From Schmidtea polychroa (lineage: Eukaryota), in contig JBJFYX010000144.1 of assembly GCA_044892525.1 (NCBI GenBank), positions 62,001 to 126,000 on the forward strand: DNA of 64,000 nucleotides, in the 5' to 3' direction. The notes under the pieces are model-generated. The model searched no databases. It was not told where the DNA came from and worked only from the letters and a program-made list of their open reading frames with translations. Positions 35,621 through 51,772 of the stretch are shown here, in pieces. Made by a program: the position numbers and the translations under genes. Numbering within the stretch: position 1 is the first letter of the stretch; each line of letters begins with the position of its first letter.

Positions 35621-38600
35621 CTATATACGTGAGCTTGGAGGGCGCTGAGCATTACAGGCCTCCACCCACTGTTCCTGCTTGATATTACTTGGTCGTTTTA
35701 CACGATGTTGAAAATTTCTTATTCTGGCCATTTCTAGTTCTCCGCGATGCCGTCTATCTTTGATTATTTTTATTGTCCCCCCCGTTATGATTAAAAAGGC
35801 CCCTGTTATTATTATGCCGCTGATCCACATCATCTGTTTTACGCTTATAATTTCCGCTTTTCCCTTGTTCGTTATTGTTGATATTGCTTCTGTGCTTTTT
35901 AGATTACCGTCTTTGCCATTTCCTTTCATCATTCCTCGTATTCTTGCTATTTCCTCGTTCATACCTTCCTTTGCCATTTTTTGTATTTTCTCCATCTCCT
36001 CCTCGGATACATAATTGTCTTGATGTTTCTCACTGTTTTTCTTGCGTTTTCCTTGCTCATCTTTTTCATCATTGATTTTTCTTTTCCTCCCTCTTTTCCC
36101 AGGGTATCGTCGACATTCTCTTTCTGGACCGTTTCTCAGGATACATACCGTATATTCCTTTGGTGGTTGTTGTTGCGTTACATATTGTAGACAATTTTCT
36201 CCTGGGCCTAGCCTCGAAATACACACTTTGTGCTCTTTTCTTGGTTGAAGCTGTGTTATCACTATTTCCCCTCCTTTACTCAGGTGTACCTCTTTCCATT
36301 TGACTTTTGTTATCTTCTTCCCGTTTCGATGTTGGTACGCTTCTTGTATTCCCACTTCCGTTATTGGTTCTGCATCTTCATTTTTTAACACTAGTCTCTG
36401 ATAAGCTCTAGACATACATCTTCCTAATATACACCTTTCTTTTAGATCCCATTCTTCTTTTAGATCCCATTGCTGCTCTTGTACTTGTTTTTTCTTTTCT
36501 TGTTTTAGTTCTTCCTCTTTGTTGTCCTTATTTTCCGTTTCCTTGGCTTCTTTTATCGTTCTCATTCCTCCCTGGGCTGTTATCATTTCCACCATTGTTA
36601 ATACGAGTATCATTATCATCATATTTGTCTCCATTTCTTTGTTGGTAAAAAGTAGGCATACCCTCTGTTTTCCACTATTCGTCTTTTCTTCTTGCTTCCT
36701 TCGGTTTCCCGGGTTATTTTCCTCTTTTTTCCTGCTCGCGTCGTTATTTTCTTGATTATTCTCCTCTGATTTCTCTTTCTCTTTATTCCCGTTTCGACCT
36801 TTTTCATTATTATCGTCGTCTTTATCGTCTTTATCTCCCCCGCTATCGTTTAAAATGTCGTCCTCGACATTTATATCATTCAACAATCTGCGGTATGCCG
36901 TTAGCACTCTGTTTCTTGCTAATTTTGCTTCGAATTCGAACTCCTTTCTGCCTGTTGCTACATGTCTCTTTCTATTCCATTCTTTTACTAATTCTCTTAA
37001 TTGTATCCGACGATGTTTTCCGATTCGCTTTTGTTCGTTTAGATTTTGCGTGAATTTGAGGTCTTCTCTGTTCAATACGATCATTATGATTTTCGGAGTT
37101 CCTCCTTTTGTTAGTGTATTTTTAACCATAGCATTTTCTCCGTTTTCGTAGAACTCATTTATATTTATTGCATATTTATTGGTTTGCGGTATTTTCCATG
37201 TTAGCAATAACTTCATGGCTTCTAAGTTCATCCGTATCGTGTTCCATTGGAACTGTGACGTGTTTTTACAGATATTTTCTACCTCAGTTCTTGTAGCATT
37301 TTTACAAATGAATCTAATCATTTCCAAGTTTGGTTGTATTGTTGCCCAATCCATGGTAGAATTCCCTTCGTTCGATATTTCGTTCAGTCTTGATCCTGAT
37401 TGATGTAGTATATGTAATGTTTTCGGGTGTATATTTGTTATTGCTGCATACATCATTGCTGTTTCTCCTTGTTCATTTTTTGCATTAGATTCTTCCCCGA
37501 AGTCTCTAAGAATTCTTATGATGGTTATGGCTCTGTTTTCTTTTGCTGCTAAGATGGCTTGTTGTAATGGTGTTCTTGAATCTTTCGTCGGTAAGGTGAA
37601 TGCTAGTGGTATGAATGTTTTTATTTTTTCTATGTCTAGATTTGTGGTCTGGTCTCTCGCGTAGGTGTGTACTGTTTTTGTTATTTTTGCTAGTATCGCT
37701 TCATCGGATAGATCTTGCATTTCTTCAAAGAATACTTCTTTAGCCTTACGTATTACTATCTCTTGGTCGGAGTTTATTATCTTTGGTTTACTTGTTGTTG
37801 CTATATATCTTATTATTTGATCGACTCGTTTCTCAGACTCTCTTGCTGTTATTTTCTTGATTTTTATCTTTTTCTTGTTCGAACTGTTAATGCGTTCCTC
37901 TGCCGTTAGAACTTGAATAATGCTTAGGTAAGTTTCTCGAATGTTATTCATATTTTCCATCATATATAATACACTCACGGTTTCCCAAAATTTTACTTGT
38001 ACTTTATCGGTAAATTGAGATATAGCTTTTTCGAAGTTGGTAATTCGGTTTCTGATTAGTTGCTCGTCTTTGTGATTTGAAAACTTTATGCCACGTTGTA
38101 GTAGTTGATTTGGAATTTCGAATAGGTGATGTCCTCTCATCGCTTCCCTCATCAAGGTGTTTTCTCCTTTGGTAAATGTTTCGTTTATATCTACCATATA
38201 ATCGTTTTTGATCGGGTTCCTCCATGCAATTAGTATTCCAGTAATTGTTATTAATTTCTCTTTGATTGCAGTTAATAACCCGTCATACATGTTTCCTATC
38301 TCCCTATTATCCTCGTACGATAATAGATCTACTAAGATTATGAATGCTTCAGTGCTTTTCCCTTCGATTGCATGATGTAGTGCATTTTTATGGTTGTGAT
38401 CTTGTGTGGTTATCTTTGACCCAGTTTCAAGTAATGCGATAATAATATCTTTAGCTTTATCCCGATTGGCTGCTATCATTAGTGGAGTGCAACCTTGGTT
38501 GTTTTCTTGATCTGTCGAAATGTTACAATCGCGAAATGCTTCAATTGTTTCTAATATCTGTTCGTTACTACCCACCTTTAAAAGCTTGTGCAGGGGTGTG

Positions 38601-41600
38601 TCTCCGTAATGGTCTGTGATCGTGAATAATATAGGCCATTGACTTTTAACTACCCTGAGCAATGGGTGTGTTCTTTCTCGATTTGCATAGTTTTCTATCA
38701 TTGTTAGCAGACCTCCCAATATCTCAAAATCTAATCTGTCTTCTGCCCATCCGGGCATTTTAGCTTTCACTTCCTTTATGATTTTCTCGGCTTCTGATGG
38801 TTGTAACCCCAATCGGTTACCTGTTGGTTCGTTTATCTGCTGTAACATATTTATTCTATACGTTTGTGATCTTGTTGTTAATGTTCGCCCTTCCGGCTGG
38901 CTGGTGGCTGTTTTCGGTATTGGCTTACATCGTGCCACATTTACATATATTGGCCTCGTGAAGGGGTTGTTTACCAATCGTACTCTCACATTGGTTTCTC
39001 CGATGAATAGAATCTCATACGGACCTTTACCGTTTCGTTGTAATTTTTTGGTGGTTCCTGGGATTAATTCTGGTGTTTCGATCATCACCCAATCGCCTGT
39101 TTGAAACGTATGCTGTTTGACGTTTTTCTTTCTATCATGTAACTCTTTGTAACTTTCTTGATAAAATTTTATATTCAATCCTGCAGTTTCCCAGATTTCC
39201 TGCATTCTTTCCTTGAACTTGGTTACATAATCGTCTATTTCCATGTATTGTGATATTGGTGGCTGATATTCTAGATCCATTGGCATATTGCATTCTCTGC
39301 CGTACATCAACCTAAACGGACTCATCTTTGTGGACGCGTGAATCGACATTCTGTAAGCCATTAAACATAATTTTATATACTCGTCCCAGTCGCGTTGATG
39401 ACGATCGACATAATTTGATAACATTTGAATCAGTGTTCCATTGAATCTTTCTGTCATACCATTAGTTTGTGGATGGTACGGTGATGTTCTAAATTTTGCG
39501 ATCTTGAAGTAGTTGGTAACTTCGCTCATTATTTCGCTCATGAAATTTGTTCCTTGATCAGTTAATATCTGTTTTGGTGTTCCATATCGACAGCATATCT
39601 CCTCTACTAGTATTTTCGCGATTGTTCTTGCTTTCTGATCTGCCATTGCGAATGCTTCGGGGAATTTTGTCAAATAATCTGTGATTACCAATATATATAT
39701 ATTTCCTCTATCTGATTCTGGTAGTGGACCGACTACGTCCATTGATATCATTGTCATTGGTTCCGCTGGTACTGGCATTGGCTTTAATGGTGCCTTCCAT
39801 TTCGTTCCCGTGTTTTTTCTGGTCGCGCAAGTTATACAGTTCTTTACCCATTCCGTTACATCCTCGGTCAATGTAGGCCAGAAGTATTTTTGTTTCATTC
39901 GTGCCAACGTCTTTTTAGATGACATATGTCCTCCGAGTCTTCCGTCATGGTATTGTGTTAGCAGATCTTTACGTCTATTCTCGGGAATGCACATCAGTCT
40001 TTTCTCGCCATCCATTATCAATAACCAATCTTTCTCTATTATATATCGATGTCGATGTTTATCCATATGCTCCTTCAATTTTTGATCTTTCTCATATACC
40101 TCTGCTTTCCCTGTTTTCACATACTCAATGATTTGCTTCAACTCTGTATCCTCTTGTTGGTCTTTCCGTAATTGGCAAAAATCTAAATCTTCTGCTACCA
40201 TCAGACATATTCGTTGCATTTCGTGATCTACTAAATCTGGAAAGATAAATCTGGACATACAATCTGCATTGGCATTCGCTCTTCCCGCTTTGAATTTTAT
40301 GAACGGTGAATATTCTTGTAACTGCATTGCCCATCGCATCAATCTACTTGAAGCTTCTTTGTGTTGACCAAGCCATACTAGTGGTTGATGATCTGTTGTG
40401 ATACATATTTCGTGTCCCCACAACAAATATCGAAAATGTTTAATCGCTTGTATAATTGCTAACGCTTCTCTCTCGGTTACGGAATAGTTTTTCTCATGCT
40501 TTTTAAACGTTCTGCTGTAGTATCCAATCACTCTTTCTTTTCCTTCTTCATCCAGTTGTCCTAATATTGCTCCGGCTGCATATCCACTTGCATCTGTTGC
40601 TAATAAGAACGGTTTCTTGAAATCAGGATGTACTAGTATTGGGGCTTCAATTAATTTATCTCGCAATGTCTCAAATGCTTTTTGTTGTTCTGCACCCCAA
40701 ATAAATGAAATATCCTTTTTCACTAATTCCTGTATTGGTTTCGCAATACCTGCATAGTTTTTGATGAATTTTCGATAATATCCGCATAATCCGAGAAATT
40801 CTTGAACTTGGGTGACAGTTTTTGGTGCTGGACATGTTTTTATTTTTTCTATGTTTCTTGGATCTGGTTCTTTGCCTTTTGCTGACACTATTTGTCCTAA
40901 GAACGTAACCTTTTCTTTTGCCCAATCACATTTGGATGGTTTGAGTTTCAATTTCCATTGTCGTAATCGGATGAACACGTTTCTAATGTCTTCCAAATGT
41001 TGTTCGAATGTTGCTGAATATATTAATAAATCATCAATATATACCATACACTGCTTGATCCCGTGTGTGACAAAATTCATACATCTCTGGAATGATGCTG
41101 GGGCATTGGTCAGTCCGAACGGCATTTTCCTGAATTGGTATAGATCTCGGCCCAATGTGAATGCTGTTTTCTCTTTGTCTTCCTCCTTGACTTTGATCTG
41201 CCAATATCCGCTTTTCAGATCTAAAGATGTAAAATATGCGGCCCCCTGTAACATAAGTAACATCTCATTGATGTCTGGTAACGGGTATGTGTCTCTTTTT
41301 GTTACTGCATTTAGTTTCCGATAATCGATACAGAATCTCTGAGTACCGTCCTTTTTCTTCACCATGACTACTGGAAATTGCCATGGCGAACAACTTGGTT
41401 CGATCACTTGTGCATCTAGCATTTTTTGTACTTCTGCTTCGGCTATCTCTTTTTGCTTCTCTGCTAGTTTGTATGGACGTAGTGCGATTGGAGTTTCGTC
41501 TATTAATGGTATTGCGTGTAATGTAACATCGCATGCTCCCAAATCTAAATCCGAAATTGCGAATATATCTTTATATTCTATCAATAATTGTTGAAGTCTT

Positions 41601-44600
41601 TCCTTTTCCTTTTCCGTTAGCAATGTGCTATCGATTGTCCATAATTCGTCAGCTTTCGTTGTTTCATTGGTGATTTTTGGTAATTCGATGTCTATCATGG
41701 GTGTCAATCTACCCAATCTTTCATTTTCATATATGATTTTATCTTCTTCCTCGAAATTTGTGATGTTGATTGGTATTTCCCTGTCTTCCTTTATTGTTAT
41801 TATTTCTCTTGCTAATGGTAATTCTCGTCGTTTTTCGAATGATTTACTTGGCTCAAAAATGGCTTCTCCTTCCATTCCTGCATCCACTTTTATTTGACAT
41901 ATCATCTGGGATTTTGCTGGTACAATTATTTTCTCCGGACATCTGATTATTGCGTTCATTTTGCATATTCTACCCATTTTATCTTTTAGGCACATTGTTG
42001 TTAGATCTATTACTACTTCTTTGAACAATTCCGGCATTAAATCCGTTCCGATTATACATGGTTCACTCAGTTTGGGTATCACCGCTAGATACGTTTCAAT
42101 TTCATTATCTTGATATCGTAACGTAGTCCACCATCTTCCTACTACGTCTACGGTTTCTTTACTGCATGCAATAATATGGATAGTTGTTTGTTCGATGTCT
42201 TTCCAACATTTACTGGGTATTTGGTTTATTGCTATTGCTGATACATTTGCTCCGGTATCTATCATTGCGCTCGTCTCTTTCCCGTTGATTTGGATCATGA
42301 CCGTTACTGCTGCTCCTCCTGGTGAACTCATTACTGCTATTGTTCTGACGTCATCAGCTTGGTCTACGCTTTTCGTTCTTCGGGTCGGCATATAGTTCAT
42401 CCCTGGTTGACTTGGTAACTGTGGATACATATTTTGTGTCATGGTCAAAGCTGTTTGTTGTCCAACGATATCTGGTGGTATATAACTTCCGTTGGCTATC
42501 CAGGTATTTGTTTTTTCTTTCTCCCAATATGGCGCTGTTTCCATTGGCTTTTCATTCGGGTTTCTACTTGGATATGGGTATTTGTCATTCCCGTTGTCGT
42601 CATCATCACTATCGCTGCTGTTTGATCGATTTCTAAATCTGTCTAGGAATTTTGGTTTGTTCTTTTTTAGTTGTGCTCTCGTTGCTTCATCATACATGGT
42701 TTTCCGAAATCGTCTACCGACTTCCTCGTCAGTTCCTTTTATTTTCGTCAGTATTTTGATCAATCGTTTTATTCTATGTATGTCTTTAGAATGACCGTGC
42801 AACACCATTGTTTTTGCCAAGAATGGTAGAAAACCTACTATCAATTTCCAATTCACTTTCTTTTCTCGCTTGTATATATCGAAGCATGCCAACATTTGGG
42901 TCAATATTACCCTGACGATCTGAATAATTAAGATGATTCCCAATATTCCTGCCATCATTTGACCGAACACTAGAAATCTTCCCCACATTGCTTTCATCAT
43001 GTTTGACGTGGCTTGTTGAAAATGATCGGGTGACAATAATAGTTCGTAATTGGGGCCTGACTGGAAATTCGTTCCCCCAGTTATGGTAACCATATTCGAT
43101 AGAATGGATTCTCGCCTTGCTGGGAATAGTACGTTTAGTCGTGCTGTTTCTAAATCCTCTGGTGAGTACATACCTGCTTTTGACACATCAATTGGTTTGA
43201 AATCTTGCTCCGTTGCGAGTTCTATTAATCCAAACTTTTTAGGTTCTTGTACTTCGGTTTTTACCGGTAACATTATCCATTTCCCATCGGGTTTTTCATA
43301 TAACGGTCCGTATGCATTTGAACAGTTAAAGGTGTTCGGATAAAATCCAATTGGGTTCATAATTCTAGTGACGGGTTGAACGAATCTGTTTCGCCCTTTG
43401 TAGCTAATTTCTAATTCATTTGCACATTTCCCTGGTGGAATTGTGGGCTTTCTTGGCAGTCGCGCAAATGTCTTGGTACATGCATATGTATACATTACCT
43501 CTCCCACCATTCTACCAAAATGTCCATCCGGTAACGGGAGTGATGGCATTGTGTTATCTGGGTGTGTTATTGCGATGGCTAATTTTGTTTTTAGTATCTC
43601 TTTATTCAATGAACAGTCATTTTGTATAAGATCGTAATACACTTTTTGCATTGTCGTTTGTCCTCGATGAAATAAAAAGTCCATTTTGTTATTGGCGTAC
43701 AGGTACAATTTTACGTCCTCTGTTGCTACCTTTCCCACTGCTCGGTCTATTACTTGCCTTGACATGTAGATACCTGCGTAGTTCGTCCGATATACTATGC
43801 TGTCACATTTGGTGGTCTCTTTTTCTCTGATGAATCTCATACCGATATCTGGATCATCTGTAATTAATGCCGTTGGTGATTTTTGTGTTGTGAGTCTCTT
43901 TTCTTTGGGGGATGGTGGAACTGGTTTCCCATTTCGCATCCTTACGTTTCCATTCTCTTCATCGTCATCCTCGTTTTCGTAAATTTCTCCTTTTACTTCA
44001 TTGAATAGAGCACTTTTTAGCAATTGGAGTCGGCATTTTTGGGTGTTAGCTTCATATATTATAGTCGAAATTCCCGTTCTACACACGTTTTCCGTAGCTC
44101 TGCATGCTGGGTTGGTTTTCATTTGATAGTTGTTTGCGTCGAATTGTGCTTCGTATTCCTTCAACTCCACTGTGTAGGACTCAATTACTACTACTCCCGA
44201 GATCACTTCTCCTCTGATCGTATATGTGCCTCCGTTACATGATCCATCAGTTGATTTTACTCGTCCGGCTACATAGATACTTTCCGTCTTGATCATTCCG
44301 CTTTGTCCGTGTATTGTTACTCCATCCCTGATTCTCATCGCTCCGGTTCTAAAAAGCTCTTTACAGTCTTCCCGTTGTATAGGTACCATTTCTTTATCTA
44401 ATCCAGGTAATATAAGGGTTGAATATGAGTATTGTCCACAGTAGTATGCCAACACTTTCTTCGATACTACGCATTCTCTAGCTTGCGTTCTAATGAAATC
44501 TGATTCTTGGTATACGTGATAGGAGACTTTCTTTTTTACTATATCTAATTTATTCGGAAATGCCTGTCTACATTCCTCTATATCTCTCAGGGAGTATCTT

Positions 44601-45517
44601 TCTCCTATTATCGAATTGTCACAGTCGTAAATGGTAAATCCCGCGGCTCCACTGGTGCAGAGCATCCATATCATCATGGTCATCATTAGTGAATTAATCG
44701 ACGCTTTTCTGCTGGCTGGGTCTTTCAATGGCAATTCCCATTCCAGCTCGTTTAGCAATTTCTTCAACCGAATTTGCATTGATCTCTCTTGCTCGTTTTT
44801 TCGTGGCGCTTGTATGAGTCTTTTCCACCCACCGGCGCGGATAATATGTGGTTCGATTGTATTTTCAATGATTGTAACGGTCATTTCTACATGATTTGCG
44901 AATTGTTTGTTAGGTATTTTCCTTGCTGCTAATCCCATCAAATTGTACATTAGATACGTTAATACTACTAAATGATGTTCGTCGTCGTTTGCGTTTAAAG
45001 TTAATTGTTCAATTACTCTTCTTGTCTCTTCCCAATCGGTTTTAGTGGTTTTTGTCTTCTCTTTGATTAATTTCGGAATTATTCCGGATATTGTATTCCA
45101 TAGCTGTCTGGCATCTACGCTTGCTACTTTTCGTTGCCATAATCGTCGCAATTGTGGGTTCGTTATTATTAGCATATCTTTTACTAGCTCTCGTATCCAT
45201 TTTTCGCCTCTTTCGATTGTTGGCTGGGCCTCTTTTAGATCCCACACTATTTTATCCAGTTTCTCTAATCTGACTTGTCCTTGTTCTTGTTTCAGTTGTT
45301 CTCTGGTTTTGAATTCTGGTTTTTCTCCTTGCTTCCTAGGTCTTCCTTTTGCCCGTTTCTCCATCATTGTTCCAGTTTCTCTGGTTGTTTCGTAACTCGG
45401 GTTTCTCTCATTATCTGTTCTTGGCAATGAGCTATCGTTGTTTCTCAACCACTCATTCCATTCGTCTATTATTTTGTCAGTTTGACCTTCTGATATTGCT
45501 TTCGTTGGTCCTTTTTT
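35621..45517 (-). CDS. pol: Bcl2-Env-Pol-ankyrin polyprotein (3275 aa in the track; frame is open back to a -1 slippery site at 45511-45517)
   Basis: Uninterrupted ORF. Protease MIDTGANVS (about 42255); RT LDLKSGYWQI, MPFGLTNAP, YIDD (41030-41041); RNase H TDASG..TEREALA..TDHQPL; integrase HDGRLGGH..CITC, MDVVGP, TDQG, ERFN, GPY (about 39020). Confidence 0.97.
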   Translation of the reverse strand, partial: KKGPTKAISEGQTDKIIDEWNEWLRNNDSSLPRTDNERNPSYETTRETGTMMEKRAKGRPRKQGEKPEFKTREQLKQEQGQVRLEKLDKIVWDLKEAQPTIERGEKWIRELVKDMLIITNPQLRRLWQRKVASVDARQLWNTISGIIPKLIKEKTKTTKTDWEETRRVIEQLTLNANDDEHHLVVLTYLMYNLMGLAARKIPNKQFANHVEMTVTIIENTIEPHIIRAGGWKRLIQAPRKNEQERSMQIRLKKLLNELEWELPLKDPASRKASINSLMMTMMIWMLCTSGAAGFTIYDCDNSIIGERYSLRDIEECRQAFPNKLDIVKKKVSYHVYQESDFIRTQARECVVSKKVLAYYCGQYSYSTLILPGLDKEMVPIQREDCKELFRTGAMRIRDGVTIHGQSGMIKTESIYVAGRVKSTDGSCNGGTYTIRGEVISGVVVIESYTVELKEYEAQFDANNYQMKTNPACRATENVCRTGISTIIYEANTQKCRLQLLKSALFNEVKGEIYENEDDDEENGNVRMRNGKPVPPSPKEKRLTTQKSPTALITDDPDIGMRFIREKETTKCDSIVYRTNYAGIYMSRQVIDRAVGKVATEDVKLYLYANNKMDFLFHRGQTTMQKVYYDLIQNDCSLNKEILKTKLAIAITHPDNTMPSLPLPDGHFGRMVGEVMYTYACTKTFARLPRKPTIPPGKCANELEISYKGRNRFVQPVTRIMNPIGFYPNTFNCSNAYGPLYEKPDGKWIMLPVKTEVQEPKKFGLIELATEQDFKPIDVSKAGMYSPEDLETARLNVLFPARRESILSNMVTITGGTNFQSGPNYELLLSPDHFQQATSNMMKAMWGRFLVFGQMMAGILGIILIIQIVRVILTQMLACFDIYKREKKVNWKLIVGFLPFLAKTMVLHGHSKDIHRIKRLIKILTKIKGTDEEVGRRFRKTMYDEATRAQLKKNKPKFLDRFRNRSNSSDSDDDDNGNDKYPYPSRNPNEKPMETAPYWEKEKTNTWIANGSYIPPDIVGQQTALTMTQNMYPQLPSQPGMNYMPTRRTKSVDQADDVRTIAVMSSPGGAAVTVMIQINGKETSAMIDTGANVSAIAINQIPSKCWKDIEQTTIHIIACSKETVDVVGRWWTTLRYQDNEIETYLAVIPKLSEPCIIGTDLMPELFKEVVIDLTTMCLKDKMGRICKMNAIIRCPEKIIVPAKSQMICQIKVDAGMEGEAIFEPSKSFEKRRELPLAREIITIKEDREIPINITNFEEEDKIIYENERLGRLTPMIDIELPKITNETTKADELWTIDSTLLTEKEKERLQQLLIEYKDIFAISDLDLGACDVTLHAIPLIDETPIALRPYKLAEKQKEIAEAEVQKMLDAQVIEPSCSPWQFPVVMVKKKDGTQRFCIDYRKLNAVTKRDTYPLPDINEMLLMLQGAAYFTSLDLKSGYWQIKVKEEDKEKTAFTLGRDLYQFRKMPFGLTNAPASFQRCMNFVTHGIKQCMVYIDDLLIYSATFEQHLEDIRNVFIRLRQWKLKLKPSKCDWAKEKVTFLGQIVSAKGKEPDPRNIEKIKTCPAPKTVTQVQEFLGLCGYYRKFIKNYAGIAKPIQELVKKDISFIWGAEQQKAFETLRDKLIEAPILVHPDFKKPFLLATDASGYAAGAILGQLDEEGKERVIGYYSRTFKKHEKNYSVTEREALAIIQAIKHFRYLLWGHEICITTDHQPLVWLGQHKEASSRLMRWAMQLQEYSPFIKFKAGRANANADCMSRFIFPDLVDHEMQRICLMVAEDLDFCQLRKDQQEDTELKQIIEYVKTGKAEVYEKDQKLKEHMDKHRHRYIIEKDWLLIMDGEKRLMCIPENRRKDLLTQYHDGRLGGHMSSKKTLARMKQKYFWPTLTEDVTEWVKNCITCATRKNTGTKWKAPLKPMPVPAEPMTMISMDVVGPLPESDRGNIYILVITDYLTKFPEAFAMADQKARTIAKILVEEICCRYGTPKQILTDQGTNFMSEIMSEVTNYFKIAKFRTSPYHPQTNGMTERFNGTLIQMLSNYVDRHQRDWDEYIKLCLMAYRMSIHASTKMSPFRLMYGRECNMPMDLEYQPPISQYMEIDDYVTKFKERMQEIWETAGLNIKFYQESYKELHDRKKNVKQHTFQTGDWVMIETPELIPGTTKKLQRNGKGPYEILFIGETNVRVRLVNNPFTRPIYVNVARCKPIPKTATSQPEGRTLTTRSQTYRINMLQQINEPTGNRLGLQPSEAEKIIKEVKAKMPGWAEDRLDFEILGGLLTMIENYANRERTHPLLRVVKSQWPILFTITDHYGDTPLHKLLKVGSNEQILETIEAFRDCNISTDQENNQGCTPLMIAANRDKAKDIIIALLETGSKITTQDHNHKNALHHAIEGKSTEAFIILVDLLSYEDNREIGNMYDGLLTAIKEKLITITGILIAWRNPIKNDYMVDINETFTKGENTLMREAMRGHHLFEIPNQLLQRGIKFSNHKDEQLIRNRITNFEKAISQFTDKVQVKFWETVSVLYMMENMNNIRETYLSIIQVLTAEERINSSNKKKIKIKKITARESEKRVDQIIRYIATTSKPKIINSDQEIVIRKAKEVFFEEMQDLSDEAILAKITKTVHTYARDQTTNLDIEKIKTFIPLAFTLPTKDSRTPLQQAILAAKENRAITIIRILRDFGEESNAKNEQGETAMMYAAITNIHPKTLHILHQSGSRLNEISNEGNSTMDWATIQPNLEMIRFICKNATRTEVENICKNTSQFQWNTIRMNLEAMKLLLTWKIPQTNKYAININEFYENGENAMVKNTLTKGGTPKIIMIVLNREDLKFTQNLNEQKRIGKHRRIQLRELVKEWNRKRHVATGRKEFEFEAKLARNRVLTAYRRLLNDINVEDDILNDSGGDKDDKDDDNNEKGRNGNKEKEKSEENNQENNDASRKKEENNPGNRRKQEEKTNSGKQRVCLLFTNKEMETNMMIMILVLTMVEMITAQGGMRTIKEAKETENKDNKEEELKQEKKKQVQEQQWDLKEEWDLKERCILGRCMSRAYQRLVLKNEDAEPITEVGIQEAYQHRNGKKITKVKWKEVHLSKGGEIVITQLQPRKEHKVCISRLGPGENCLQYVTQQQPPKEYTVCILRNGPERECRRYPGKRGRKRKINDEKDEQGKRKKNSEKHQDNYVSEEEMEKIQKMAKEGMNEEIARIRGMMKGNGKDGNLKSTEAISTITNKGKAEIISVKQMMWISGIIITGAFLIITGGTIKIIKDRRHRGELEMARIRNFQHRVKRPSNIKQEQWVEACNAQRPPSSRI
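37100..38620 (-). other. Two ankyrin-repeat clusters fused after integrase
   Basis: DHYGDTPLH, NNQGCTPLMIAA, DHNHKNALHHA, KGENTL (38100-38620); DSRTPLQQA, NEQGETAMMYAA, NEGNSTMDWA, NGENAM (37100-37590). Confidence 0.85.
42800..44702 (-). other. env: Envelope glycoprotein domain, chuvirus-like / class III fusion type
   Basis: Signal segment LMMTMMIWMLCTSGAAG followed by FTIYDC..YSLRDIEEC..YQ..EC..YYCG; Cys-rich ectodomain; end WGRFLVFGQMMAGILGIILIIQIVRVIL. This pattern is typical of chuviral glycoproteins. Confidence 0.8.
44810..45210 (-). other. Bcl-2-like domain of the polyprotein
   Basis: BH2-like TIEPHIIRAGGWKRLI (compare Bcl-2 HLHTWIQDNGGWDAFV), preceded by a helical BH1-position segment RRVIEQLTLNANDDEHHLVVLTYLMYNL. 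Confidence 0.65.
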
Positions 45518-46542
45518 TGTCGTTGAAATTGTTCGTCAATTTCGGTTTCTGTCGTATTATCGGCAATTTCCTCTATGTTCAGCTTATTTGGTTGTTGATA
45601 GCTAGTTGATGGTTGGCTTGTTGTCCATATTTCAGCCCCTGTCGGCCATCTTACCAGAATTGGTGATCTTTCTCCAGCTCCTTCATCGCTGTCTTCCAAT
45701 ATAATTTCCTCGATTTCCTCGGTTTCATTCGATTTACTCGCCACTTTGTTAGGGCTTGGTGTACTCAAGCTACCTTTCGTAGGTTTACTGGATTTGCTCT
45801 TCTTTTTAATCGGTTTTCCCAATGTTTCTGCCATTGTCAATACATTGATCTCCCCCAATCTCATGGGTGTTATTCCGACATCTGCATTATCATCCAACGA
45901 TTTTCCGAATAGTTGTAGGTGAAATGGAGTTTCGTATGCTAATTTCTTTTTTAACTCTCTGATCTTTGTGGTTGGATGTACTTCTGTATCCTCAATGCTT
46001 TTGTCGGGATACTTGACTCGGATACGATACCTTTCCTGGGTATCTTGTGCCCATTCTTGGTTTCTCCATTTCCTAATAATTTGTTCTAGCTGTTCTGGGT
46101 ACCATTCGTTATATTGTCGGTATTCCTCAATCGCTTTCGCCATTTCTCTTAGATTGTGGATATTCTCTGATGTCTTTAGGATGATGTTAGCCAATGCTAT
46201 TACTTGACGTTTTTGATTTTTTGCTCCCGTTGCTAAGATATCACCTAATTGTTTATATCTTTCCTTCTCTTCTCGTTCTCGAGCTTCCATCGCTTCTTCG
46301 CTGTCCATATCGGCATATTCGCGTTCTTTCTTTCTCATCGCATGAATATGTCTAGTTTCCATTTCACTTTCTGACGTAACATCCGTTTCGCTTTCGTCGT
46401 CCGATATCGATTCTATTTCGTCCTCTTCGTATTTTGGAGGTTCATCTTCCTCTTCTTCTGATTCACTTTCTGTCTCACCAATGTCTGTTTCTACGAAAAT
46501 CCCTTTCCTGATTTCCCATTCTTTGTTTTCCGCATTCCACAT
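45469..46542 (-). CDS. ORF2, 357 aa: acidic tract plus ubiquitin-like domain; in frame with gag after a single TGA
   Basis: RYRIRVKYPDKSIEDTEVHPTTKIRELKKKL..HLQLFGKSLDDNADV follows the ubiquitin pattern (QIFVKT..TIENVKAKI..RLIFAGKQLEDGRTL). Confidence 0.8.
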   Translation of the reverse strand: MWNAENKEWEIRKGIFVETDIGETESESEEEEDEPPKYEEDEIESISDDESETDVTSESEMETRHIHAMRKKEREYADMDSEEAMEAREREEKERYKQLGDILATGAKNQKRQVIALANIILKTSENIHNLREMAKAIEEYRQYNEWYPEQLEQIIRKWRNQEWAQDTQERYRIRVKYPDKSIEDTEVHPTTKIRELKKKLAYETPFHLQLFGKSLDDNADVGITPMRLGEINVLTMAETLGKPIKKKSKSSKPTKGSLSTPSPNKVASKSNETEEIEEIILEDSDEGAGERSPILVRWPTGAEIWTTSQPSTSYQQPNKLNIEEIADNTTETEIDEQFQRQKKDQRKQYQKVKLTK

Positions 46543-46548
46543 CCTTTC

Positions 46549-49497
46549 TCATGGGGTTCGTCTGCAGGATCTAGTACTCAGTTTCTTTATTTTCCCTTGA
46601 AGCTCTTTTTCCTTTAGCCATTGTTGATGAATTTCAATTATCTCCACTGATTTTTGGTATAGCGTTTTCATCCTGTCCCGTATCTCTTTCTGGTATGTTA
46701 CATCTCTTGTTCGGAATTCGTCCATGGGTAATATTCTGATGATTTGATGATTATCCCACATTCCCATTTCGCTTAGCGAGGTGTCGTCTTCGGCCCGTAA
46801 TATTATTTTATCGTACATCAGGACTACATCATCTATCATCCCGTCGCTACTCTCGCTTCGTACTTTTTCCGTTACCTCTTGGTTTATCTTGGTTACTAAG
46901 TCATCCACCGTACTCTGATTACTCATCTTTATTCGTCGTTTCTCCTCGTTTGGTAACCATATGGTTATTTCTAATTTCTGCGGTTGCGTTTCTTTCAACC
47001 TTCCATATTTGTGGATCAAATTTATGGTTCTCCAATCACTCATTCGGAGCAGTTCTGTATCTCGCAGTCGGCTCATTAGTTCATGCATGTCTGCAGTTCG
47101 TCTTGTTATGAGCAAATCCCAGTTATCTTCAACTTGTTCTTGGATTTGTTTGATTAATTTATCTAGATTTCGTCGCAAGGTGCATTGTTTTATTTGTTCC
47201 AGCTTCAGCTTGATGTTAAAGTCATACTCGGCCTTGGCGTCTTTAGCCCATTCGTGAATATTTGCTGGTTGCTTCTCTTTATGCAATTTCAATATTTGAG
47301 TTTCTCCTGGCCAGATCAATGCATCTATTAGGTGCATGTCTGGTTTGATTTGTTCTCCTTGATATTGATACAGGTATTCTTTCTTTCTCGAGCTGCCCAA
47401 ATGTTCTCTTATCCAATCGAAAAGATCGTCTGTAACTGCATTTTTTATCCATATTCTCTCGAGTCCTTTACTCGTTCCGATTTTTATTACATAGCGTGTT
47501 GTCTCCGCTTGTTTCATTTTTTCCATATACTTCTTTATTATCGCTTTTTCCTCGTTTGGTATTAGATCTTTTTCGTTTCTTTCTAGTTTCATTATCTTTT
47601 GTATGAAGCGTCTGTATGGTATGATGTCAATGAATTCCTGGTTTCTTACCACCACTGGAAGTATTTCCTTTACTTGTTTTATCGCTTCTTCTCTTTCTTT
47701 TCTCAATTTCATTTCGATATTCTCGTCTTCGCTTTCGCTTGTCACGTCGCTTTCACTTTCATCCTCATCTGCTCCGATCTTTTCTCTTAGTTGGTCGATA
47801 TTTTCATTTAACTGTAACATTTCTCCACCAAGGCTACTCACGTAATCCTCATCGTCATCTGTTGACGACACCTTCTTTGTTGTCCTCATCATATTAATTC
47901 GCAAATTTCTCATTCTTGGTACTTTCTTTAACTTTTTGTTCTCGAATGTCGTTAGCTCCTCTGAGTCTAATTCTTGTATCATATCATGATTTAGATGATT
48001 AATCCGTTTTTTATTTTTGTTATTTTCCGCTTCTGCTTCTGTTTTTGTTTTCTCATTTTCTCTTTCGATTTTATCTTTTATCTTTTTCCAAAATATTTTC
48101 TGAATTCTCTGATTTCCTTTTAGCGGTGTTGTTGAATTTTCCTTTTTTGCTGCTGTAATTGTTTCTTTCGGTTTCTCGGGTTCGCTCATAGGTACAACTC
48201 TTGGATTTTTACCGTAATTGTAACAATATTGCTCTTTTATCTCCCTTACCATTCTCATCATATTTATTCGTAATGGTTGTTCTTGTCGTTGCTGAATTCG
48301 CTCTCTTTTTATCCTTTCTTCTTCAGCTTGTAGTCTTTGCCATTCTTGTGCATGTTGTTGCACTTCATAATTATTAAGATTCTCGGTGCTCCTCATCATG
48401 CGTATATTCTGGGTTTGTTGTGCTACTGGTTCTTGTCTCGGTCTCATCATTTGTTGCATCATCTGTTTCATTTGTGAAATTTCTTGCATCACGTTCATTT
48501 GCTTTCCCTCACTAGGATTACTTTGTCGTTGCGGATTTGATGCATAGTTATTATTTCGCTGTGGTGGTCGTTGTTGTTGGCTCCTTTCTCGACAGTCTCT
48601 TGAGATATGACCTGGTTGACCGCAGTTAAAACATCCTCTCAATTGGCATATATTTTCCGTGTGTCCTCGTCGTCCACACCTATTGCAATTTGCGTTTCGG
48701 TAACAATCTCTATCCCAATGTCCTGGTTTACCGCATATTCGGCATTGTTTGTTATCGTTCATATTTCGTCGATTATTAAAGTTGTTCCCATTGTTCGAGT
48801 TGTTGCGTTCACTGTTATTCCCATTTGATCGTCCTTGTGGTGGTTTGAAGATTTGATGTGCTCCTGGTATAAACTGATTCATCTTGGGTTCATGATTGTT
48901 GTTATCTCCGTTTTCCGTTTTCACCGTTGCTGTAGCGATTCTTCCCTCCTCTTGCATGACATTCATTTGTGCTGGGAGGTGTAGTTCGCATCTTGTGGCC
49001 CAATCTATGGCTTCTTCTAGTGTTTTACACATTTGACATCCCACCGAGGCCCTTACCTCTTCTCGGCGCAGTCCTTCTATGAAGTAACCAATTAGATTTT
49101 CCTCCGGCAAGTTTCCGTTCATGGCCTTTTTTGCCAATCTTCGCAATTCACTCGCATATAACGTTATGGATTCATTTGCTCTTTGTTTTCTACTTGCCAG
49201 TTCACCTAACGCTTGATTTATCGGTTTGCTGGCTCCGAAGGTTTTCCTCAAAAATGTTTTGATGCTTTCCCAATTGTCTAATTTCGTATTTCTTTCTTTT
49301 GCTTCTAGATACACTTCGAGTGCGCTATCGCACAAAAACAGAGGCATTCGTTTACTAATTGCTTCCGCTGTCCATCCGCACACATCGATATAGACTTCAA
49401 AATTTGTTATGAACGTTGCCAACTTGTTCGCATTCCCGTTAAACGGTTCGCCTCTAAATTTTTCTTTATACTCGTCGGTTTTTACCACATTCATCAT
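46549..49497 (-). CDS. gag: Gag, 982 aa: capsid, three CCHC knuckles, C-terminal extension with two ubiquitin-like domains
   Basis: FNGNANKLATFITNFE..W; KQRANESITLYASELRRLA..FIEGL; CRICGKPGHWDRDC, CNRCGRRGHTENIC, CFNCGQPGHISRDC; UBL-like segments at about 47280-47500 and 46725-46980. Confidence 0.93.
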   Translation of the reverse strand: MMNVVKTDEYKEKFRGEPFNGNANKLATFITNFEVYIDVCGWTAEAISKRMPLFLCDSALEVYLEAKERNTKLDNWESIKTFLRKTFGASKPINQALGELASRKQRANESITLYASELRRLAKKAMNGNLPEENLIGYFIEGLRREEVRASVGCQMCKTLEEAIDWATRCELHLPAQMNVMQEEGRIATATVKTENGDNNNHEPKMNQFIPGAHQIFKPPQGRSNGNNSERNNSNNGNNFNNRRNMNDNKQCRICGKPGHWDRDCYRNANCNRCGRRGHTENICQLRGCFNCGQPGHISRDCRERSQQQRPPQRNNNYASNPQRQSNPSEGKQMNVMQEISQMKQMMQQMMRPRQEPVAQQTQNIRMMRSTENLNNYEVQQHAQEWQRLQAEEERIKRERIQQRQEQPLRINMMRMVREIKEQYCYNYGKNPRVVPMSEPEKPKETITAAKKENSTTPLKGNQRIQKIFWKKIKDKIERENEKTKTEAEAENNKNKKRINHLNHDMIQELDSEELTTFENKKLKKVPRMRNLRINMMRTTKKVSSTDDDEDYVSSLGGEMLQLNENIDQLREKIGADEDESESDVTSESEDENIEMKLRKEREEAIKQVKEILPVVVRNQEFIDIIPYRRFIQKIMKLERNEKDLIPNEEKAIIKKYMEKMKQAETTRYVIKIGTSKGLERIWIKNAVTDDLFDWIREHLGSSRKKEYLYQYQGEQIKPDMHLIDALIWPGETQILKLHKEKQPANIHEWAKDAKAEYDFNIKLKLEQIKQCTLRRNLDKLIKQIQEQVEDNWDLLITRRTADMHELMSRLRDTELLRMSDWRTINLIHKYGRLKETQPQKLEITIWLPNEEKRRIKMSNQSTVDDLVTKINQEVTEKVRSESSDGMIDDVVLMYDKIILRAEDDTSLSEMGMWDNHQIIRILPMDEFRTRDVTYQKEIRDRMKTLYQKSVEIIEIHQQWLKEKELQGKIKKLSTRSCRRTP

Positions 49498-50883
49498 GAC
49501 TGGTTCTTGTAACTCTATTGTTTCTTTTAAATTTTCCAGCGATGTCGCTAAATTATAGACGGATAATTCTTCTGTTGACCCGGTTAGGTTGTTTGTTATA
49601 TCGGATAGGCTTTCTCTACTTCTAGATCGACTGGGCGTATGTCCGGCTGTGGGGTTTTCTTGATCGTATATCGGTGTTTTGTGGGGTCTTTTTGCTCCTT
49701 GTGATATTCCTCTCTGCTGCCTAAATGATCGTCCTCTTTTGAGTTGATCTAATTCGTCTCCTGAAAATAATACGTCTCCTGGCTTACTTGAAGATCTAAG
49801 GTTGGGTTTATCCGTGATTTTCTTTTTACTCTTTTCTGTCTTTCCACGTGGGTTTTTCTACGGTTAGCGGCTGCTGAATTGGTCGAGTTCGGTTCTGATA
49901 GTGTTTTCTTCGAGGAATATTCTGCGTAATTTCTCGGCTGATTTCCGGAGGAGATATCTGAGTCCTTGATTGACTTCTGCTAGTACGTCGATGCTAAGTA
50001 TTTCGATAATTCCGTCGTAGATAAAGATGTCGTTGTCGTCCTCCGTATTCGGATTGATTTGTTTTTTCCTTTGTGCGGGTTCTGAATTGCTTTTCCTGGG
50101 TTGTTTGTATATTCTCTAGATTCCTTTTGAGCTGGTTCTGAATTGACTTGGTTGGATAGATATCTACAATGAAAAAATGATATCGTGTTGCATTTGCTTA
50201 CACGAATCAATCATTCCTTTTTACCATATTCAAGCACAGACACCGTTTTTGGGCCTCTGTTATACTTCTCTTCATTTCCCCTCATACACTTCTTCGTGGA
50301 ATATAATTACCCATCAACCCATATTTTTCGTCGATTTTAAATTATCTATTTGGGGTAGTAACAATTATCTATATAGTCGTATAAATTATCTATAGTTAGC
50401 ATTTATAATATCGATAGGTCGTTGTCAGTTACTGCTTATTACCCCCCATATTTTCCTTAATCCTTTTACGCGGTTCCGCTATTTTATTTACTCTTTCGTC
50501 TCTGTTTCCTTTTACTCGGTTCTACTCTGGAACCAAAAACAAAATTCGTTTAACCGGTTTAAACCCAAAAAAAATTCTGTAGAACTTTGTCTACCTATCT
50601 GGGATCCCCTTTAATTAATTAATTATTTCCTCTTTGGTTCATCATCTATTCATACTTATTCATTGTTTCTATTATCTCCTGATTCATTTTCCTTTTCCGT
50701 TTCTCCTTCTTCACTAAAAGAATTTTACTATCATCTTTTACGAGCTCGTTTAATCCTTTCTAAATTCAAATTCCATATTTCAAACTCAATTTGCTTCTAG
50801 CTAGCTTTAATATTCTATCTCACTAGTAATTTAAATGTTATCAACTTGTAGCTTAAATGCTATCTCACTATTACTTTAGGCCT

Positions 50884-51180
50884 TTACGACTGGCTGGCAC
50901 TATTCAACAGCTCAATCTTCCTCTCCTGACCGGTTGGACTATTCAACAACTCGATCTTACGACTGGCTGGCACTATTCAACAGCTCAATCTTCTTCTCCT
51001 GACCGGTTGGACTATTCAACAACTCGATCTTACGACTGGCTGGCACTATTCAACAGCTCAATCTTCTTCTCCTGACCGGTTGGACTATTCAACAACTCGG
51101 CCTTATTATCCCCGACTGGCTGGACTTTTCACAGCTCAGTTTCAATTTCCCTGACCGGCTGGACTTTTCGACAGCTCGGC
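50884..51180. repeat. 73-bp tandem repeat x3 plus a degenerate fourth unit in the element leader
   Basis: Units start at 50884, 50957 and 51030; each unit consists of two related about 36-bp halves. Confidence 0.9.
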
Positions 51181-51772
51181 CCTAATGTCTCTAAACTCTG
51201 CATGCTTCCGTTCCTTTTCTGTCTTTATTCTATACTGTCATCTTCCTATTTTTACTTTTATTTGTCGACCTAATCTGTACCGCTTTGGAATGTTTCCCCT
51301 TTTCCCCTTGCTCAAAACACAAAACGATCGCATTGATCCATTTCTACATTGGTATGGTGATCAGCCATACCGCAGAAACTTTTCAATATTCGCGATGGTA
51401 CCTCGCTTTACATCTCTTACTCGGGGTGATCGGTTGTCCCTCCCCAAACGGTTTCCAACATCGTACCTCCCGAAGGTGGCTCGGTTTATTCCCCCTTTAA
51501 CCCTATGACGGGACTAGTTCCACTTTAAATAATCATTTTAAATTTTAAAATGCCCTTTCTTCATGGTGAAAATTATAACAACACAAATCAATTTATAACT
51601 TCGTATAATGAAATGAATACACAAAAAGGATTTATTAGTTATTTCCTCCACATTACAGATAATATATGCTATCATTATAAAACATTACCGAATTAAATCA
51701 GAACAAAAATATCAAAATGTTTAGTCTAATTGTTAATCATCCAATTTCCTTCACCGAGCGACGATCGCGTAC

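What the first reader, a model, noticed from the sequence alone, without database searches (positions are those of the whole stretch)
41980..44702. Envelope glycoprotein embedded inside Pol, upstream of the protease
Seen: signal-like segment, about 550-aa Cys-rich ectodomain, TM segment and about 150-aa tail, then protease-RT-RNase H-IN, all in one frame. Known: env in retroviruses and errantiviruses lies downstream of pol as a separate ORF; chuvirus-like glycoproteins have been captured by Bel/Pao elements. Inference: signal peptidase would cut after ..GAAG, separating the Gag side from Env and leaving Pol covalently attached to the Env cytoplasmic tail. Enzymes could then be packaged through Env rather than a Gag-Pol fusion, with a flavivirus-like polyprotein topology.
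Basis: partly seen in the sequence, partly recalled or inferred. Interest (0 to 1): 0.93.

Follow-up and report, generated by a model that had tools for sequence, protein, structure and literature searches.

The report
Burro-type giant retroelement with in-frame Env
The window holds a young 30.6-kb Ty3/gypsy-type endogenous retrovirus whose chuvirus-like (class III) envelope gene lies in the same reading frame as, and upstream of, protease-RT-RNase H-integrase; this odd layout is real and conserved, but it was already described for the planarian 'Burro' elements in 2019.

Summary
On the minus strand, one 3,275-codon open frame encodes, in this order: a weak Bcl-2-like segment, a signal-like hydrophobic segment, a 556-aa Cys-rich ectodomain, a TM, a tail, then PR-RT-RNase H-IN, ankyrin repeats and more.

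- **Env identity:** it matches Pfam PF24664 (6.7e-72). Its AlphaFold model (pLDDT 86) matches herpesvirus gB (Foldseek 2e-14) and, best of all, chu-like virus glycoproteins (7e-39). It is therefore a class III fusogen.
- **The element:** it is an intact LTR element of 30,620 bp, with 4,202-bp LTRs 99.76% identical, TG..CA ends and a 4-bp target duplication. Pol is of Ty3/gypsy type, not Bel/Pao.
- **Conservation:** the order Env-PR-RT-RH-IN within one protein recurs in all 16 divergent relatives checked, including a Caenorhabditis nigoni gene model. All 14 examined for it keep the internal signal-like segment.
- **Novelty:** there is none in kind. [quoted passage not shown] GAG-ENV-POL elements with gB-type Env are also reported for flatworms, nematodes and bryozoans.
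- **Mechanism:** Packaging of Pol through Env is speculation.

The parts
26297..56916 (-). Whole LTR retroelement, 30,620 bp (internal region 22.2 kb)
   Evidence: Self-BLAST found two 4,202-bp direct repeats, 99.76% identical. Ends are TGTTGG...CCAACA and the flanks carry a GTAG duplication.
52716..56916 (-). 5' LTR (in the element's orientation)
26297..30498 (-). 3' LTR
26293..26296 (.). Target-site duplication GTAG; the other copy is at 56917-56920
52692..52708 (-). Candidate primer-binding site: 17 nt starting TGG, 7 nt after the 5' LTR. The matching tRNA was not identified.
   Evidence: Sequence read. No tRNA gene in the window to compare it with. Weak.
51773..52252 (-). Accessory ORF in the leader, 159 aa, with a C-terminal RING (zf-C3HC4_3, the type found in IAP proteins)
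   Evidence: Pfam E 2.5e-8; ORF listed
50884..51181 (.). Tandem repeats in the leader (73-79-bp unit, about 3-4 copies)
35621..49497 (-). gag-to-pol coding region, given as one part. In this copy it is read in three stretches: one in-frame stop and one frame change (-1), both upstream of the Bcl-2-like/Env segment. There are none within the 3,275 codons that hold Env and Pol.
49063..49344 (-). Gag capsid-like domain (Retrotrans_gag)
   Evidence: Pfam 4.2e-10
48592..48744 (-). Three CCHC zinc knuckles of Gag
   Evidence: Pfam zf-CCHC 3e-12; sequence
45847..46152 (-). Segment conserved with relative P0001, ubiquitin-like by eye; no Pfam hit
   Evidence: BLASTP 23% identity, E 2e-5; Pfam negative
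44825..45019 (-). Bcl-2-like segment (aa 144-208), weak
   Evidence: Pfam Bcl-2 E 0.048, below cut-off. Shared with relative P0002 at 28% identity, E 7e-5. A PDB profile search gave a top list of almost only Bcl-xL, at E 0.17-0.6. The AF2 model is unusable.
44639..44686 (-). Internal signal-like hydrophobic segment (aa 255-270)
42971..44638 (-). Env ectodomain (aa 271-826), class III fusion glycoprotein of the chuvirus-like (PF24664) family
42881..42970 (-). Env transmembrane segment (aa about 827-856)
   Evidence: Kyte-Doolittle 2.53; modelled as part of one long helix
42800..42856 (-). Second, moderately hydrophobic juxtamembrane segment (aa 865-883), conserved in the whole glycoprotein family
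42302..42799 (-). Env tail / linker to the protease (aa 884-1049), basic then acidic, no domain hit
42026..42301 (-). Retroviral-type aspartic protease (aa 1050-1141)
   Evidence: Pfam RVP 1.4e-7
40889..41362 (-). Reverse transcriptase (aa 1363-1520)
   Evidence: Pfam RVT_1 9.7e-36
40310..40699 (-). RNase H (aa 1584-1713)
   Evidence: Pfam RT_RNaseH 3.9e-39 and RT_RNaseH_2 7.6e-37
39416..39988 (-). Integrase (zinc-binding H2C2 domain plus catalytic core, aa 1821-2011)
   Evidence: Pfam Integrase_H2C2 1.9e-20, rve 1.1e-12
38327..38551 (-). Ankyrin repeats, first cluster (aa 2300-2374)
   Evidence: Pfam Ank_2
37418..37528 (-). Ankyrin repeats, second cluster (aa about 2641-2677)
   Evidence: Pfam Ank_4
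35759..36634 (-). C-terminal region bounded by two further hydrophobic segments (aa 2939-2962 and 3200-3230), with about 240 aa between them
   Evidence: Hydropathy. No homology to relatives after integrase.
33615..35033 (-). Accessory ORF, 472 aa, RING + MATH (TRAF-like)
   Evidence: Pfam MATH_2 8.4e-24, zf-C3HC4 9.7e-5
31477..33397 (-). Two further accessory ORFs (340 aa and 240 aa) with no family hit

Best explanation
This is a young, essentially intact Burro-type giant Ty3/gypsy LTR retroelement (an endogenous retrovirus of an AT-rich invertebrate genome, most likely a planarian). It carries a captured chuvirus-like class III fusion glycoprotein between its gag side and pol, in one reading frame with PR-RT-RNase H-IN.

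Proposed working, all of it inferred:
1. The long open frame is translated as a membrane-threaded polyprotein.
2. The internal hydrophobic segment acts as a signal sequence. It follows a Bcl-2-like segment and may double as that segment's tail anchor.
3. The ectodomain enters the ER lumen, and host signal peptidase cuts in front of it.
4. The TM stops transfer, so the tail and all enzymes stay on the cytosolic face, tethered to the membrane.
5. The element's own aspartic protease then frees them. Several relatives carry an extra DDI-like protease in the tail.

What is shown: the anatomy, the fold, the family, the conservation of the order and of the hydrophobic segments, and the youth of the copy. 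What is inferred: cleavage by signal peptidase, the existence of an Env-Pol precursor, and where Pol ends up.
For: Anatomy.

Element intact and young:
- 4,202-bp LTRs, 99.76% identical, with TG..CA ends and a 4-bp duplication.
- 3,275 codons without a stop.

Class III, chuvirus-like Env:
- PF24664, 6.7e-72.
- AF2 model pLDDT 86.4.
- Foldseek to gB 2.1e-14, probability 1.0, over about 650 columns.
- Foldseek to chu-like virus glycoproteins 6.8e-39, TM-score up to 0.61.
- 1,024 sequence homologues.

Layout under selection:
- Env-PR-RT-RH-IN in one protein in all 16 divergent relatives checked, with Env identity down to 29%.
- The closest Pol relatives (42-45% identity) nearly all carry PF24664.
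- Gag domains share the ORF with Env-Pol in P0001, P0165, P0172 and P0004.

Internal signal:
- It sits where 89 free-standing homologues have about 19 N-terminal residues.
- It is kept in all 14 embedded relatives examined.
- Flank charges are +2/-2.

Cytosolic Pol:
- Four K/R lie right after the TM.
- The second hydrophobic segment has positive flanks on both sides (+2/+4), is interrupted by two Lys and a Pro, and is not modelled as one helix.

Match to published Burro (PMC6431247): size above 30 kb, gag with CCHC knuckles, MATH/TRAF, ankyrin, BCL2-like segment just before env, and env in frame between gag and pol.
Against: - No transcript or protein data were available, so translation through the Env-Pol junction, signal-peptidase cleavage and protease release are untested.
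- The second hydrophobic segment after the TM is conserved throughout the family. In some relatives, such as P0001, it is as hydrophobic as the TM itself, so a hairpin cannot be ruled out by hydropathy alone.
- In this copy gag, the next segment and Env-Pol are not in one continuous frame: there is one stop and one -1 frame change. The frames overlap by 64 nt and hold a slippery-type heptamer. I estimate about a 1-in-6 chance of that by composition alone, so programmed recoding and decay cannot be told apart.
- The Bcl-2 assignment is below every threshold.
- The host was not identified. The exact proteins are absent from the collection, and the relatives come from metagenome contigs.
- The BIR and dUTPase-like motifs reported for Burro were not found.
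Confidence: 0.6

Rival explanations
1. Env and Pol expression are uncoupled at the RNA level. Cis- or trans-splicing yields a gag-pol message without env and/or a subgenomic env message, as in retroviruses and errantiviruses. The giant fused frame would then be only the genomic-RNA arrangement.
For: The host is a eukaryote, and retroviruses express env from spliced RNA (established knowledge). Both this element and P0001 have a Met about 30 residues upstream of the signal-like segment. The ORFs of relatives were called on metagenome contigs without any intron model.
Against: Env has no stop of its own in any of the 16 relatives checked. A message starting at env would therefore still be read into pol. 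An open junction kept at 29-47% Env identity argues that ribosomes cross it. No splice site was predicted by any tool here.
Confidence: 0.2
2. The internal hydrophobic segment is an uncleaved signal-anchor. The gag side, Env and Pol stay one chain with the ectodomain looped into the lumen, and only the element's protease cuts, on the cytosolic side. Gag and Pol would remain linked until assembly.
For: This would keep the classical Gag-Pol linkage. Four relatives have gag in the same ORF. The residues before the ectodomain are not conserved between this element and P0001, so a cleavage motif is not obviously kept.
Against: In this copy small residues sit at -3/-1. Free-standing homologues have an ordinary short N-terminal signal at that position.
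Confidence: 0.12
3. The TM and the second hydrophobic segment form a two-pass hairpin, so the protease-RT-integrase part would be lumenal.
For: The second segment is conserved in the family and reaches Kyte-Doolittle 1.2-2.1 over 15 residues.
Against: In this copy the loop is only about 6-8 residues and holds four K/R. The flank after the segment is strongly basic at +4. The segment contains two Lys and a Pro and is broken in the model. Lumenal replication enzymes would make no biological sense for an element that is young and intact.
Confidence: 0.05
4. The fused frame is a dead relic or an assembly artefact with no function.
For: The gag side is separated from Env-Pol by one stop and one frame change in this copy.
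Against: The LTRs are 99.76% identical, the target duplication is intact and 3,275 codons are open. The same layout occurs in independent assemblies from several sources. Published work reports Burro as abundant and transcribed (PMC8532177).
Confidence: 0.03

Closest known systems
Burro / GYPSM1 giant gypsy-like LTR retrotransposons of planarians (Grohme et al. 2018; Arkhipova & Yushenova 2019, PMC6431247)
   Same: Total length above 30 kb. Gag with Retrotrans_gag and CCHC knuckles. PR-RT-RH-IN order. MATH/TRAF, ankyrin and a BCL2-like motif directly before env. Env gives hits to mononegavirus fusion glycoproteins and lies in frame between gag and pol. Tandem repeats and accessory ORFs are present.
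   Different: MATH/TRAF is a separate ORF downstream of pol here. It lies inside the polyprotein in S. mediterranea Burro1 and in an upstream ORF in the Dugesia tigrina element. The gag side is not in one continuous frame with Env-Pol in this copy. BIR and dUTPase-like motifs were not detected. Nucleotide identity to Burro-1 to -4 could not be tested.
GAG-ENV-POL 'errantivirus-like' Ty3/gypsy elements of Platyhelminthes, Nematoda and Bryozoa (Chary & Hayashi 2026, PMC13524379; Sacco et al. 2022, as cited there)
   Same: Env of gB/class III type placed between gag and pol. A Caenorhabditis nigoni gene model (P0216) shows the same Env-PR-RT-RH-IN order.
   Different: Those elements were defined as three ORFs with gaps allowed. 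Here Env and Pol are one uninterrupted frame, and the element is several times larger with many accessory domains.
Anakin: mosquito Bel/Pao elements with a captured chuvirus glycoprotein (Dezordi et al. 2020, PMC7642597)
   Same: The same glycoprotein family (chuvirus-like, class III) was captured by an LTR retroelement.
   Different: A different retroelement superfamily (Bel/Pao against Ty3/gypsy), a different host phylum, and no report there of env in frame upstream of the protease.
Glycoproteins of chu-like viruses (Jingchuvirales); herpesvirus gB
   Same: Fold (Foldseek 7e-39 and 2e-14), conserved Cys pattern, TM followed by a conserved juxtamembrane segment.
   Different: Those are free-standing proteins of about 650 aa with an N-terminal signal and a tail of about 60 aa. 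Here 270 residues precede the ectodomain and about 2,400 follow the membrane region. Identity is 17-20% to the chu-like glycoproteins and about 10% to gB.
Membrane-threaded polyproteins of flaviviruses, alphaviruses and bunyaviruses (analogy only, from established knowledge)
   Same: Internal signal and stop-transfer segments would place alternate parts in the lumen and the cytosol, with host signal peptidase and a viral protease sharing the processing.
   Different: No homology. For this element the processing is inferred, not shown.

Membership tests
Burro-type giant Ty3/gypsy LTR retrotransposon | LTR element longer than 30 kb with an internal region up to 25 kb | tested here: met
   30,620 bp in total; 22.2 kb internal; 4,202-bp LTRs
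Burro-type giant Ty3/gypsy LTR retrotransposon | Gag with Retrotrans_gag and 2-3 CCHC knuckles; Pol order PR-RT-RH-IN | tested here: met
   Pfam; three knuckles visible in the sequence
Burro-type giant Ty3/gypsy LTR retrotransposon | env in frame between gag and pol, similar to mononegavirus fusion glycoproteins | tested here: met
Burro-type giant Ty3/gypsy LTR retrotransposon | Accessory motifs: MATH/TRAF, ankyrin, BCL2-like, Ubi2/SUMO-like, BIR, dUTPase-like | tested here: inconclusive
   MATH and ankyrin are clear. BCL2-like is weak. The ubiquitin-like segment rests only on conservation. BIR and dUTPase-like were not found at E up to 1. An IAP-type RING was found.
Burro-type giant Ty3/gypsy LTR retrotransposon | Host is a planarian (Dugesiidae); nucleotide similarity to Burro-1 to -4 / GYPSM1 | not testable with these tools
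   No reference sequence or host genome was on hand. The exact proteins are not in the collection. AT-rich flanks (22-25% GC) fit but do not prove it.
Class III viral fusion glycoproteins (PF24664 Monjiviricetes_fusion; gB-like fold) | Sequence match above the family cut-off | tested here: met
   242.9 bits against a cut-off of 27
Class III viral fusion glycoproteins (PF24664 Monjiviricetes_fusion; gB-like fold) | Fold match to solved class III fusogens | tested here: met
   All 50 listed PDB matches are herpesvirus gB, E down to 2.1e-14, probability 1.0. Model pLDDT 86.4.
Class III viral fusion glycoproteins (PF24664 Monjiviricetes_fusion; gB-like fold) | Type I membrane topology (signal, ectodomain, TM, cytosolic tail) | tested here: inconclusive
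   Hydropathy and charge fit. The second hydrophobic segment and the internal position of the signal leave it unproven.
Class III viral fusion glycoproteins (PF24664 Monjiviricetes_fusion; gB-like fold) | Trimer formation and membrane-fusion activity | not tested
   No tool for it; a functional test is outside what this report may propose.
   No such Pfam hit. RT_RNaseH, RT_RNaseH_2 and Integrase_H2C2 were found instead, and the nearest Pol relatives are gypsy-type.
Bcl-2 family (segment upstream of Env) | Match to the Bcl-2 profile above cut-off; helical-bundle fold; C-terminal hydrophobic anchor | tested here: inconclusive
   14.7 bits against a cut-off of 31.4. PDB profile hits are Bcl-xL at E 0.17-0.6, over the last conserved motif only. 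The model has pLDDT 45.8 and is unusable. A hydrophobic segment follows about 45 residues later.

The most novel reading that the evidence does not exclude
The Env-Pol fusion may be the obligatory translation product. The element would then make a flavivirus-like, membrane-threaded polyprotein with four membrane segments:
- the gag side ends in a Bcl-2-like, tail-anchored protein, and that anchor is at the same time the Env signal peptide;
- the replication enzymes are delivered to assembly sites as the cytosolic tail of a class III fusogen, rather than as a Gag-Pol fusion.

No retroelement has been shown to work this way.
Probability: 0.3. Interest if true: 0.7.

Novelty: already known. Interest (0 to 1): 0.3.

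Why it matters
The layout breaks the textbook gag-pol-env order. It raises a real question about how reverse transcriptase and integrase reach the particle when a membrane glycoprotein sits between Gag and Pol.

That question is still open, because the published descriptions are sequence annotations only.
- a confident class III fold assignment, with chu-like virus glycoproteins as the nearest viral relatives;
- evidence that the Env-Pol frame fusion and the internal signal-like segment are conserved across many divergent elements, including a nematode one;
- a conserved juxtamembrane segment that bears on topology;
- the idea that the Env signal doubles as the anchor of a Bcl-2-like protein.

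As a discovery of a new kind of system it does not count, because the arrangement was explicitly reported in 2019.

Tried and rejected
- **Word-index search with the Env piece alone**: no hit at E <= 1e-5. The exhaustive HMMER search was needed.
- **Viral-contig scan with Env**: nothing confirmed.
- **PDB sequence search** with Env and with the N-terminal segment: no meaningful hit. Only the fold search worked.
- **Exact look-up of the element's six proteins**: none is in the collection, so the host could not be named that way.
- **Other routes to the host:** Rfam and tRNA scans of the window were empty. Primer tables for BURRO1 probes are not held. Sacco et al. 2022 is not held.
- **AF2 of the Bcl-2-like segment** with a two-row alignment: pLDDT 45.8. 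I did not run a fold search on it, because the result would be meaningless.
- **Homology after integrase** between this element and its relatives: none.
- **Bel/Pao membership:** rejected.
- **Programmed frameshift or readthrough at the two interruptions:** could not be decided from one copy.
Full report
**1. What is at the coordinates**

The finding's interval lies on the minus strand, inside a single 3,275-codon open frame. Residues are numbered as in the translation. Pfam gives:

| Domain | Residues | E-value |
|---|---|---|
| PF24664 Monjiviricetes_fusion ("viral fusion glycoprotein") | best stretch 521-860 | 6.7e-72 (243 bits, cut-off 27) |
| RVP (protease) | 1050-1141 | 1.4e-7 |
| RVT_1 (RT) | 1363-1520 | 9.7e-36 |
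| RT_RNaseH | 1609-1713 | 3.9e-39 |
| Integrase_H2C2 / rve | 1821-1993 | 1.9e-20 / 1.1e-12 |
| Ankyrin repeats | about 2300-2374 and 2641-2677 | 2.7e-16 (Ank_2) |

Hydropathy shows five hydrophobic segments:
- a signal-like segment at 255-270;
- a strong TM at about 827-856 (Kyte-Doolittle 2.53);
- a second, weaker segment at 865-883;
- two more near the C-terminus (2939-2962 and 3200-3230).

The ectodomain (271-826) has 15 Cys. Thirteen of these Cys columns are at least 90% conserved across 111 aligned homologues. The wording "inside Pol" is also imprecise: Env lies between the gag side and pol.

**2. The element around it**

A self-comparison finds two 4,202-bp direct repeats that are 99.76% identical, at 26297-30498 and 52716-56916. 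They have TGTTGG...CCAACA ends and a 4-bp GTAG duplication in the flanks. This is a 30,620-bp LTR element on the minus strand, and it inserted recently.

Upstream of the long frame:
- a Gag with Retrotrans_gag and three CCHC knuckles;
- a segment conserved with a relative that looks ubiquitin-like;
- a 159-aa RING ORF and 73-bp tandem repeats in the leader.

Downstream of pol:
- a 472-aa RING+MATH (TRAF-like) ORF;
- two ORFs with no family hit.

The Pol domains are of Ty3/gypsy type, and nothing of Bel/Pao type was hit.

In this copy the gag-to-pol coding region is not one continuous frame. It has one in-frame stop and one -1 frame change, both upstream of the Bcl-2-like/Env segment, and none within Env-Pol. 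The two frames overlap by 64 nt, and the overlap holds a slippery-type heptamer. I estimate that composition alone would give that about one time in six. I therefore cannot tell programmed recoding from decay.

**3. What the Env is**

The exhaustive HMMER search found 1,024 homologues at E <= 0.001. Most are free-standing proteins of about 650 aa. The best hits are long polyproteins.

An AlphaFold2 model of residues 250-900, built on 111 sequences, has mean pLDDT 86.4.
- Against the PDB, all 50 listed matches are herpesvirus gB. The best is 5v2s_A at 2.1e-14, probability 1.0, with about 650 aligned columns.
- Against predicted viral structures, the best matches are glycoproteins of chu-like viruses, at 6.8e-39, with TM-score up to 0.61 for Tacheng Tick Virus 4 and 17-20% identity.

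The Env is thus a class III fusogen of the chuvirus-like family.

**4. Is the layout an accident of this copy?**

It is not.
- P0001 (4,029 aa, from a metagenome contig) is colinear with the window from Gag through Env (40% identity) to integrase (43%), all in one ORF.
- Pfam or phmmer mapping shows Env followed by PR/RT/RH/IN in every one of 16 divergent proteins checked. These include P0216, annotated by NCBI as from Caenorhabditis nigoni.
- In the Pol search, the relatives with the highest identity (42-45%) carry PF24664, apart from one shorter protein (P0164).
- Four relatives also have gag domains in the same ORF (P0001, P0165, P0172, P0004).
- All 14 embedded relatives examined for it keep a hydrophobic segment immediately before the ectodomain, although 150-1,136 residues precede it.
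- In 89 free-standing homologues, a median of 19 residues precedes that point, which is an ordinary N-terminal signal.
- Several relatives carry an extra DDI-like aspartic protease between the Env tail and the retroviral protease.

**5. Topology**

- The signal-like segment has flank charges of +2 on the N side and -2 on the C side, and small residues at -3/-1.
- The TM is followed at once by four K/R.
- The second hydrophobic segment is conserved across the whole glycoprotein family, including the free-standing proteins.
- In this element that segment holds two Lys and a Pro and has positive flanks on both sides (+2/+4). It is not modelled as one helix, although model confidence there is low.

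I read it as a juxtamembrane, membrane-associated segment on the cytosolic side. I cannot exclude a hairpin, and in P0001 the two segments are equally hydrophobic.

The two C-terminal hydrophobic segments would put a further stretch of about 240 aa in the lumen. P0001 has a comparable pair, but without detectable homology.

**6. The segment before Env**

- Residues 144-208 give a weak Bcl-2 Pfam hit: E 0.048, 14.7 bits against a cut-off of 31.4.
- The segment is shared with P0002 at 28% identity, E 7e-5.
- A two-sequence profile searched against the PDB returns almost only Bcl-xL entries at the top, at E 0.17-0.6 and over the last conserved motif only.
- The structure model is unusable, with pLDDT 45.8.
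- A BCL2-like motif directly before env is what the literature reports for Burro.

If the assignment is real, the signal-like segment sits where Bcl-2 proteins have their tail anchor. It could then serve both roles. This is my inference.

**7. Comparison with the literature**

- Arkhipova & Yushenova 2019 (PMC6431247) describe the planarian Burro/GYPSM1 elements. Their features are a total length above 30 kb, gypsy-like Pol, Gag with CCHC knuckles, MATH_TRAF_C, Ubi2/SUMO-like, BCL2-like, ankyrin and BIR motifs, and an env region with hits to arthropod and fish mononegavirus fusion glycoproteins. [quoted passage not shown]
- Chary & Hayashi 2026 (PMC13524379) report GAG-ENV-POL elements with gB-type Env in Nematoda, Bryozoa and Platyhelminthes. 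They cite Sacco et al. 2022 for the nematode elements.
- Dezordi et al. 2020 (PMC7642597) describe the capture of a chuvirus glycoprotein by mosquito Pao elements.
- Li et al. 2021 (PMC8532177) describe BURRO1 as abundant, active, gut-enriched and controlled by SMEDWI-2.

The window's element matches the Burro description in size, gag, env position, MATH, ankyrin and (weakly) BCL2-like. It differs in three ways:
- MATH is a downstream accessory ORF.
- No BIR or dUTPase-like hit was found.
- The gag side is in separate frames.

The host could not be identified. The AT-rich flanks (22-25% GC) fit a planarian genome but do not prove it.

**8. Verdict**

The topology and an Env-Pol precursor are plausible but not shown. 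Packaging of Pol through Env is speculation. The Bel/Pao framing and the implied novelty are wrong. The kind of system is already known. The open question, how such a polyprotein is processed and how Pol reaches particles, remains interesting and could be addressed with descriptive transcript and proteome data.

Noticed in passing
window 35759-36634 (-): Near the C-terminus of the long frame, after integrase and the ankyrin repeats, two more hydrophobic segments bracket about 240 aa with several Cys. This looks like a second small type-I-like membrane module inside the polyprotein. P0001 has a comparable pair of segments but no detectable homology.
   Followed up: partly
window 51773-52252 (-): A 159-aa ORF in the leader between the 5' LTR and gag has a C-terminal RING of the zf-C3HC4_3 (IAP-like) type. 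No BIR domain was found anywhere in the element, although BIR is reported for Burro.
   Followed up: partly
window 33615-35033 (-), 32375-33397 (-), 31477-32199 (-): Three accessory ORFs lie between pol and the 3' LTR. One is a 472-aa RING+MATH (TRAF-like) protein. The other two (340 and 240 aa) have no family hit.
   Followed up: partly
L001 15110-16390, L003 9547-11622: Two relatives carry an accessory ORF with an RNase_T (DEDD exonuclease) domain downstream of the polyprotein (weak in L001). The window's element has nothing like it.
   Followed up: no
P0003 848-940, P0004 1557-1660, P0002 1059-1157, P0001 3354-3446: Relatives carry a second, DDI1-like aspartic protease domain (PF09668). In three of them it lies between the Env tail and the retroviral protease; in P0001 it lies after integrase. 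The window's element lacks it.
   Followed up: partly
window 10719-12244 (-): RING and MATH pieces of another TRAF-like gene lie in the AT-rich flank. The one 63-aa stretch that aligns is 33% identical to the element's MATH ORF, so this is not a copy of it. It could be a host TRAF gene or the remnant of another element.
   Followed up: partly
window 16808-18654 (-): A hAT-type transposase (BED zinc finger plus hAT dimerisation domain) is split over three overlapping ORFs, so it is a decayed DNA transposon.
   Followed up: no
window 8181-8731 and 9195-9747: A pair of direct repeats of about 560 bp, 92% identical and 1 kb apart, of unknown nature.
   Followed up: no
window 57700-59900: Dense satellite-like DNA next to the element: 18-bp units containing AAGGTCA, (ATT)n runs and repeats of about 130-320 bp, interrupted by an assembly gap (59526-59658, left as it is).
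   Followed up: no
window 50884-51181: A 73-79-bp tandem repeat (about 3-4 copies, up to 99% matching) lies in the leader upstream of gag. Tandem repeats are also drawn in the published Burro maps.
   Followed up: no
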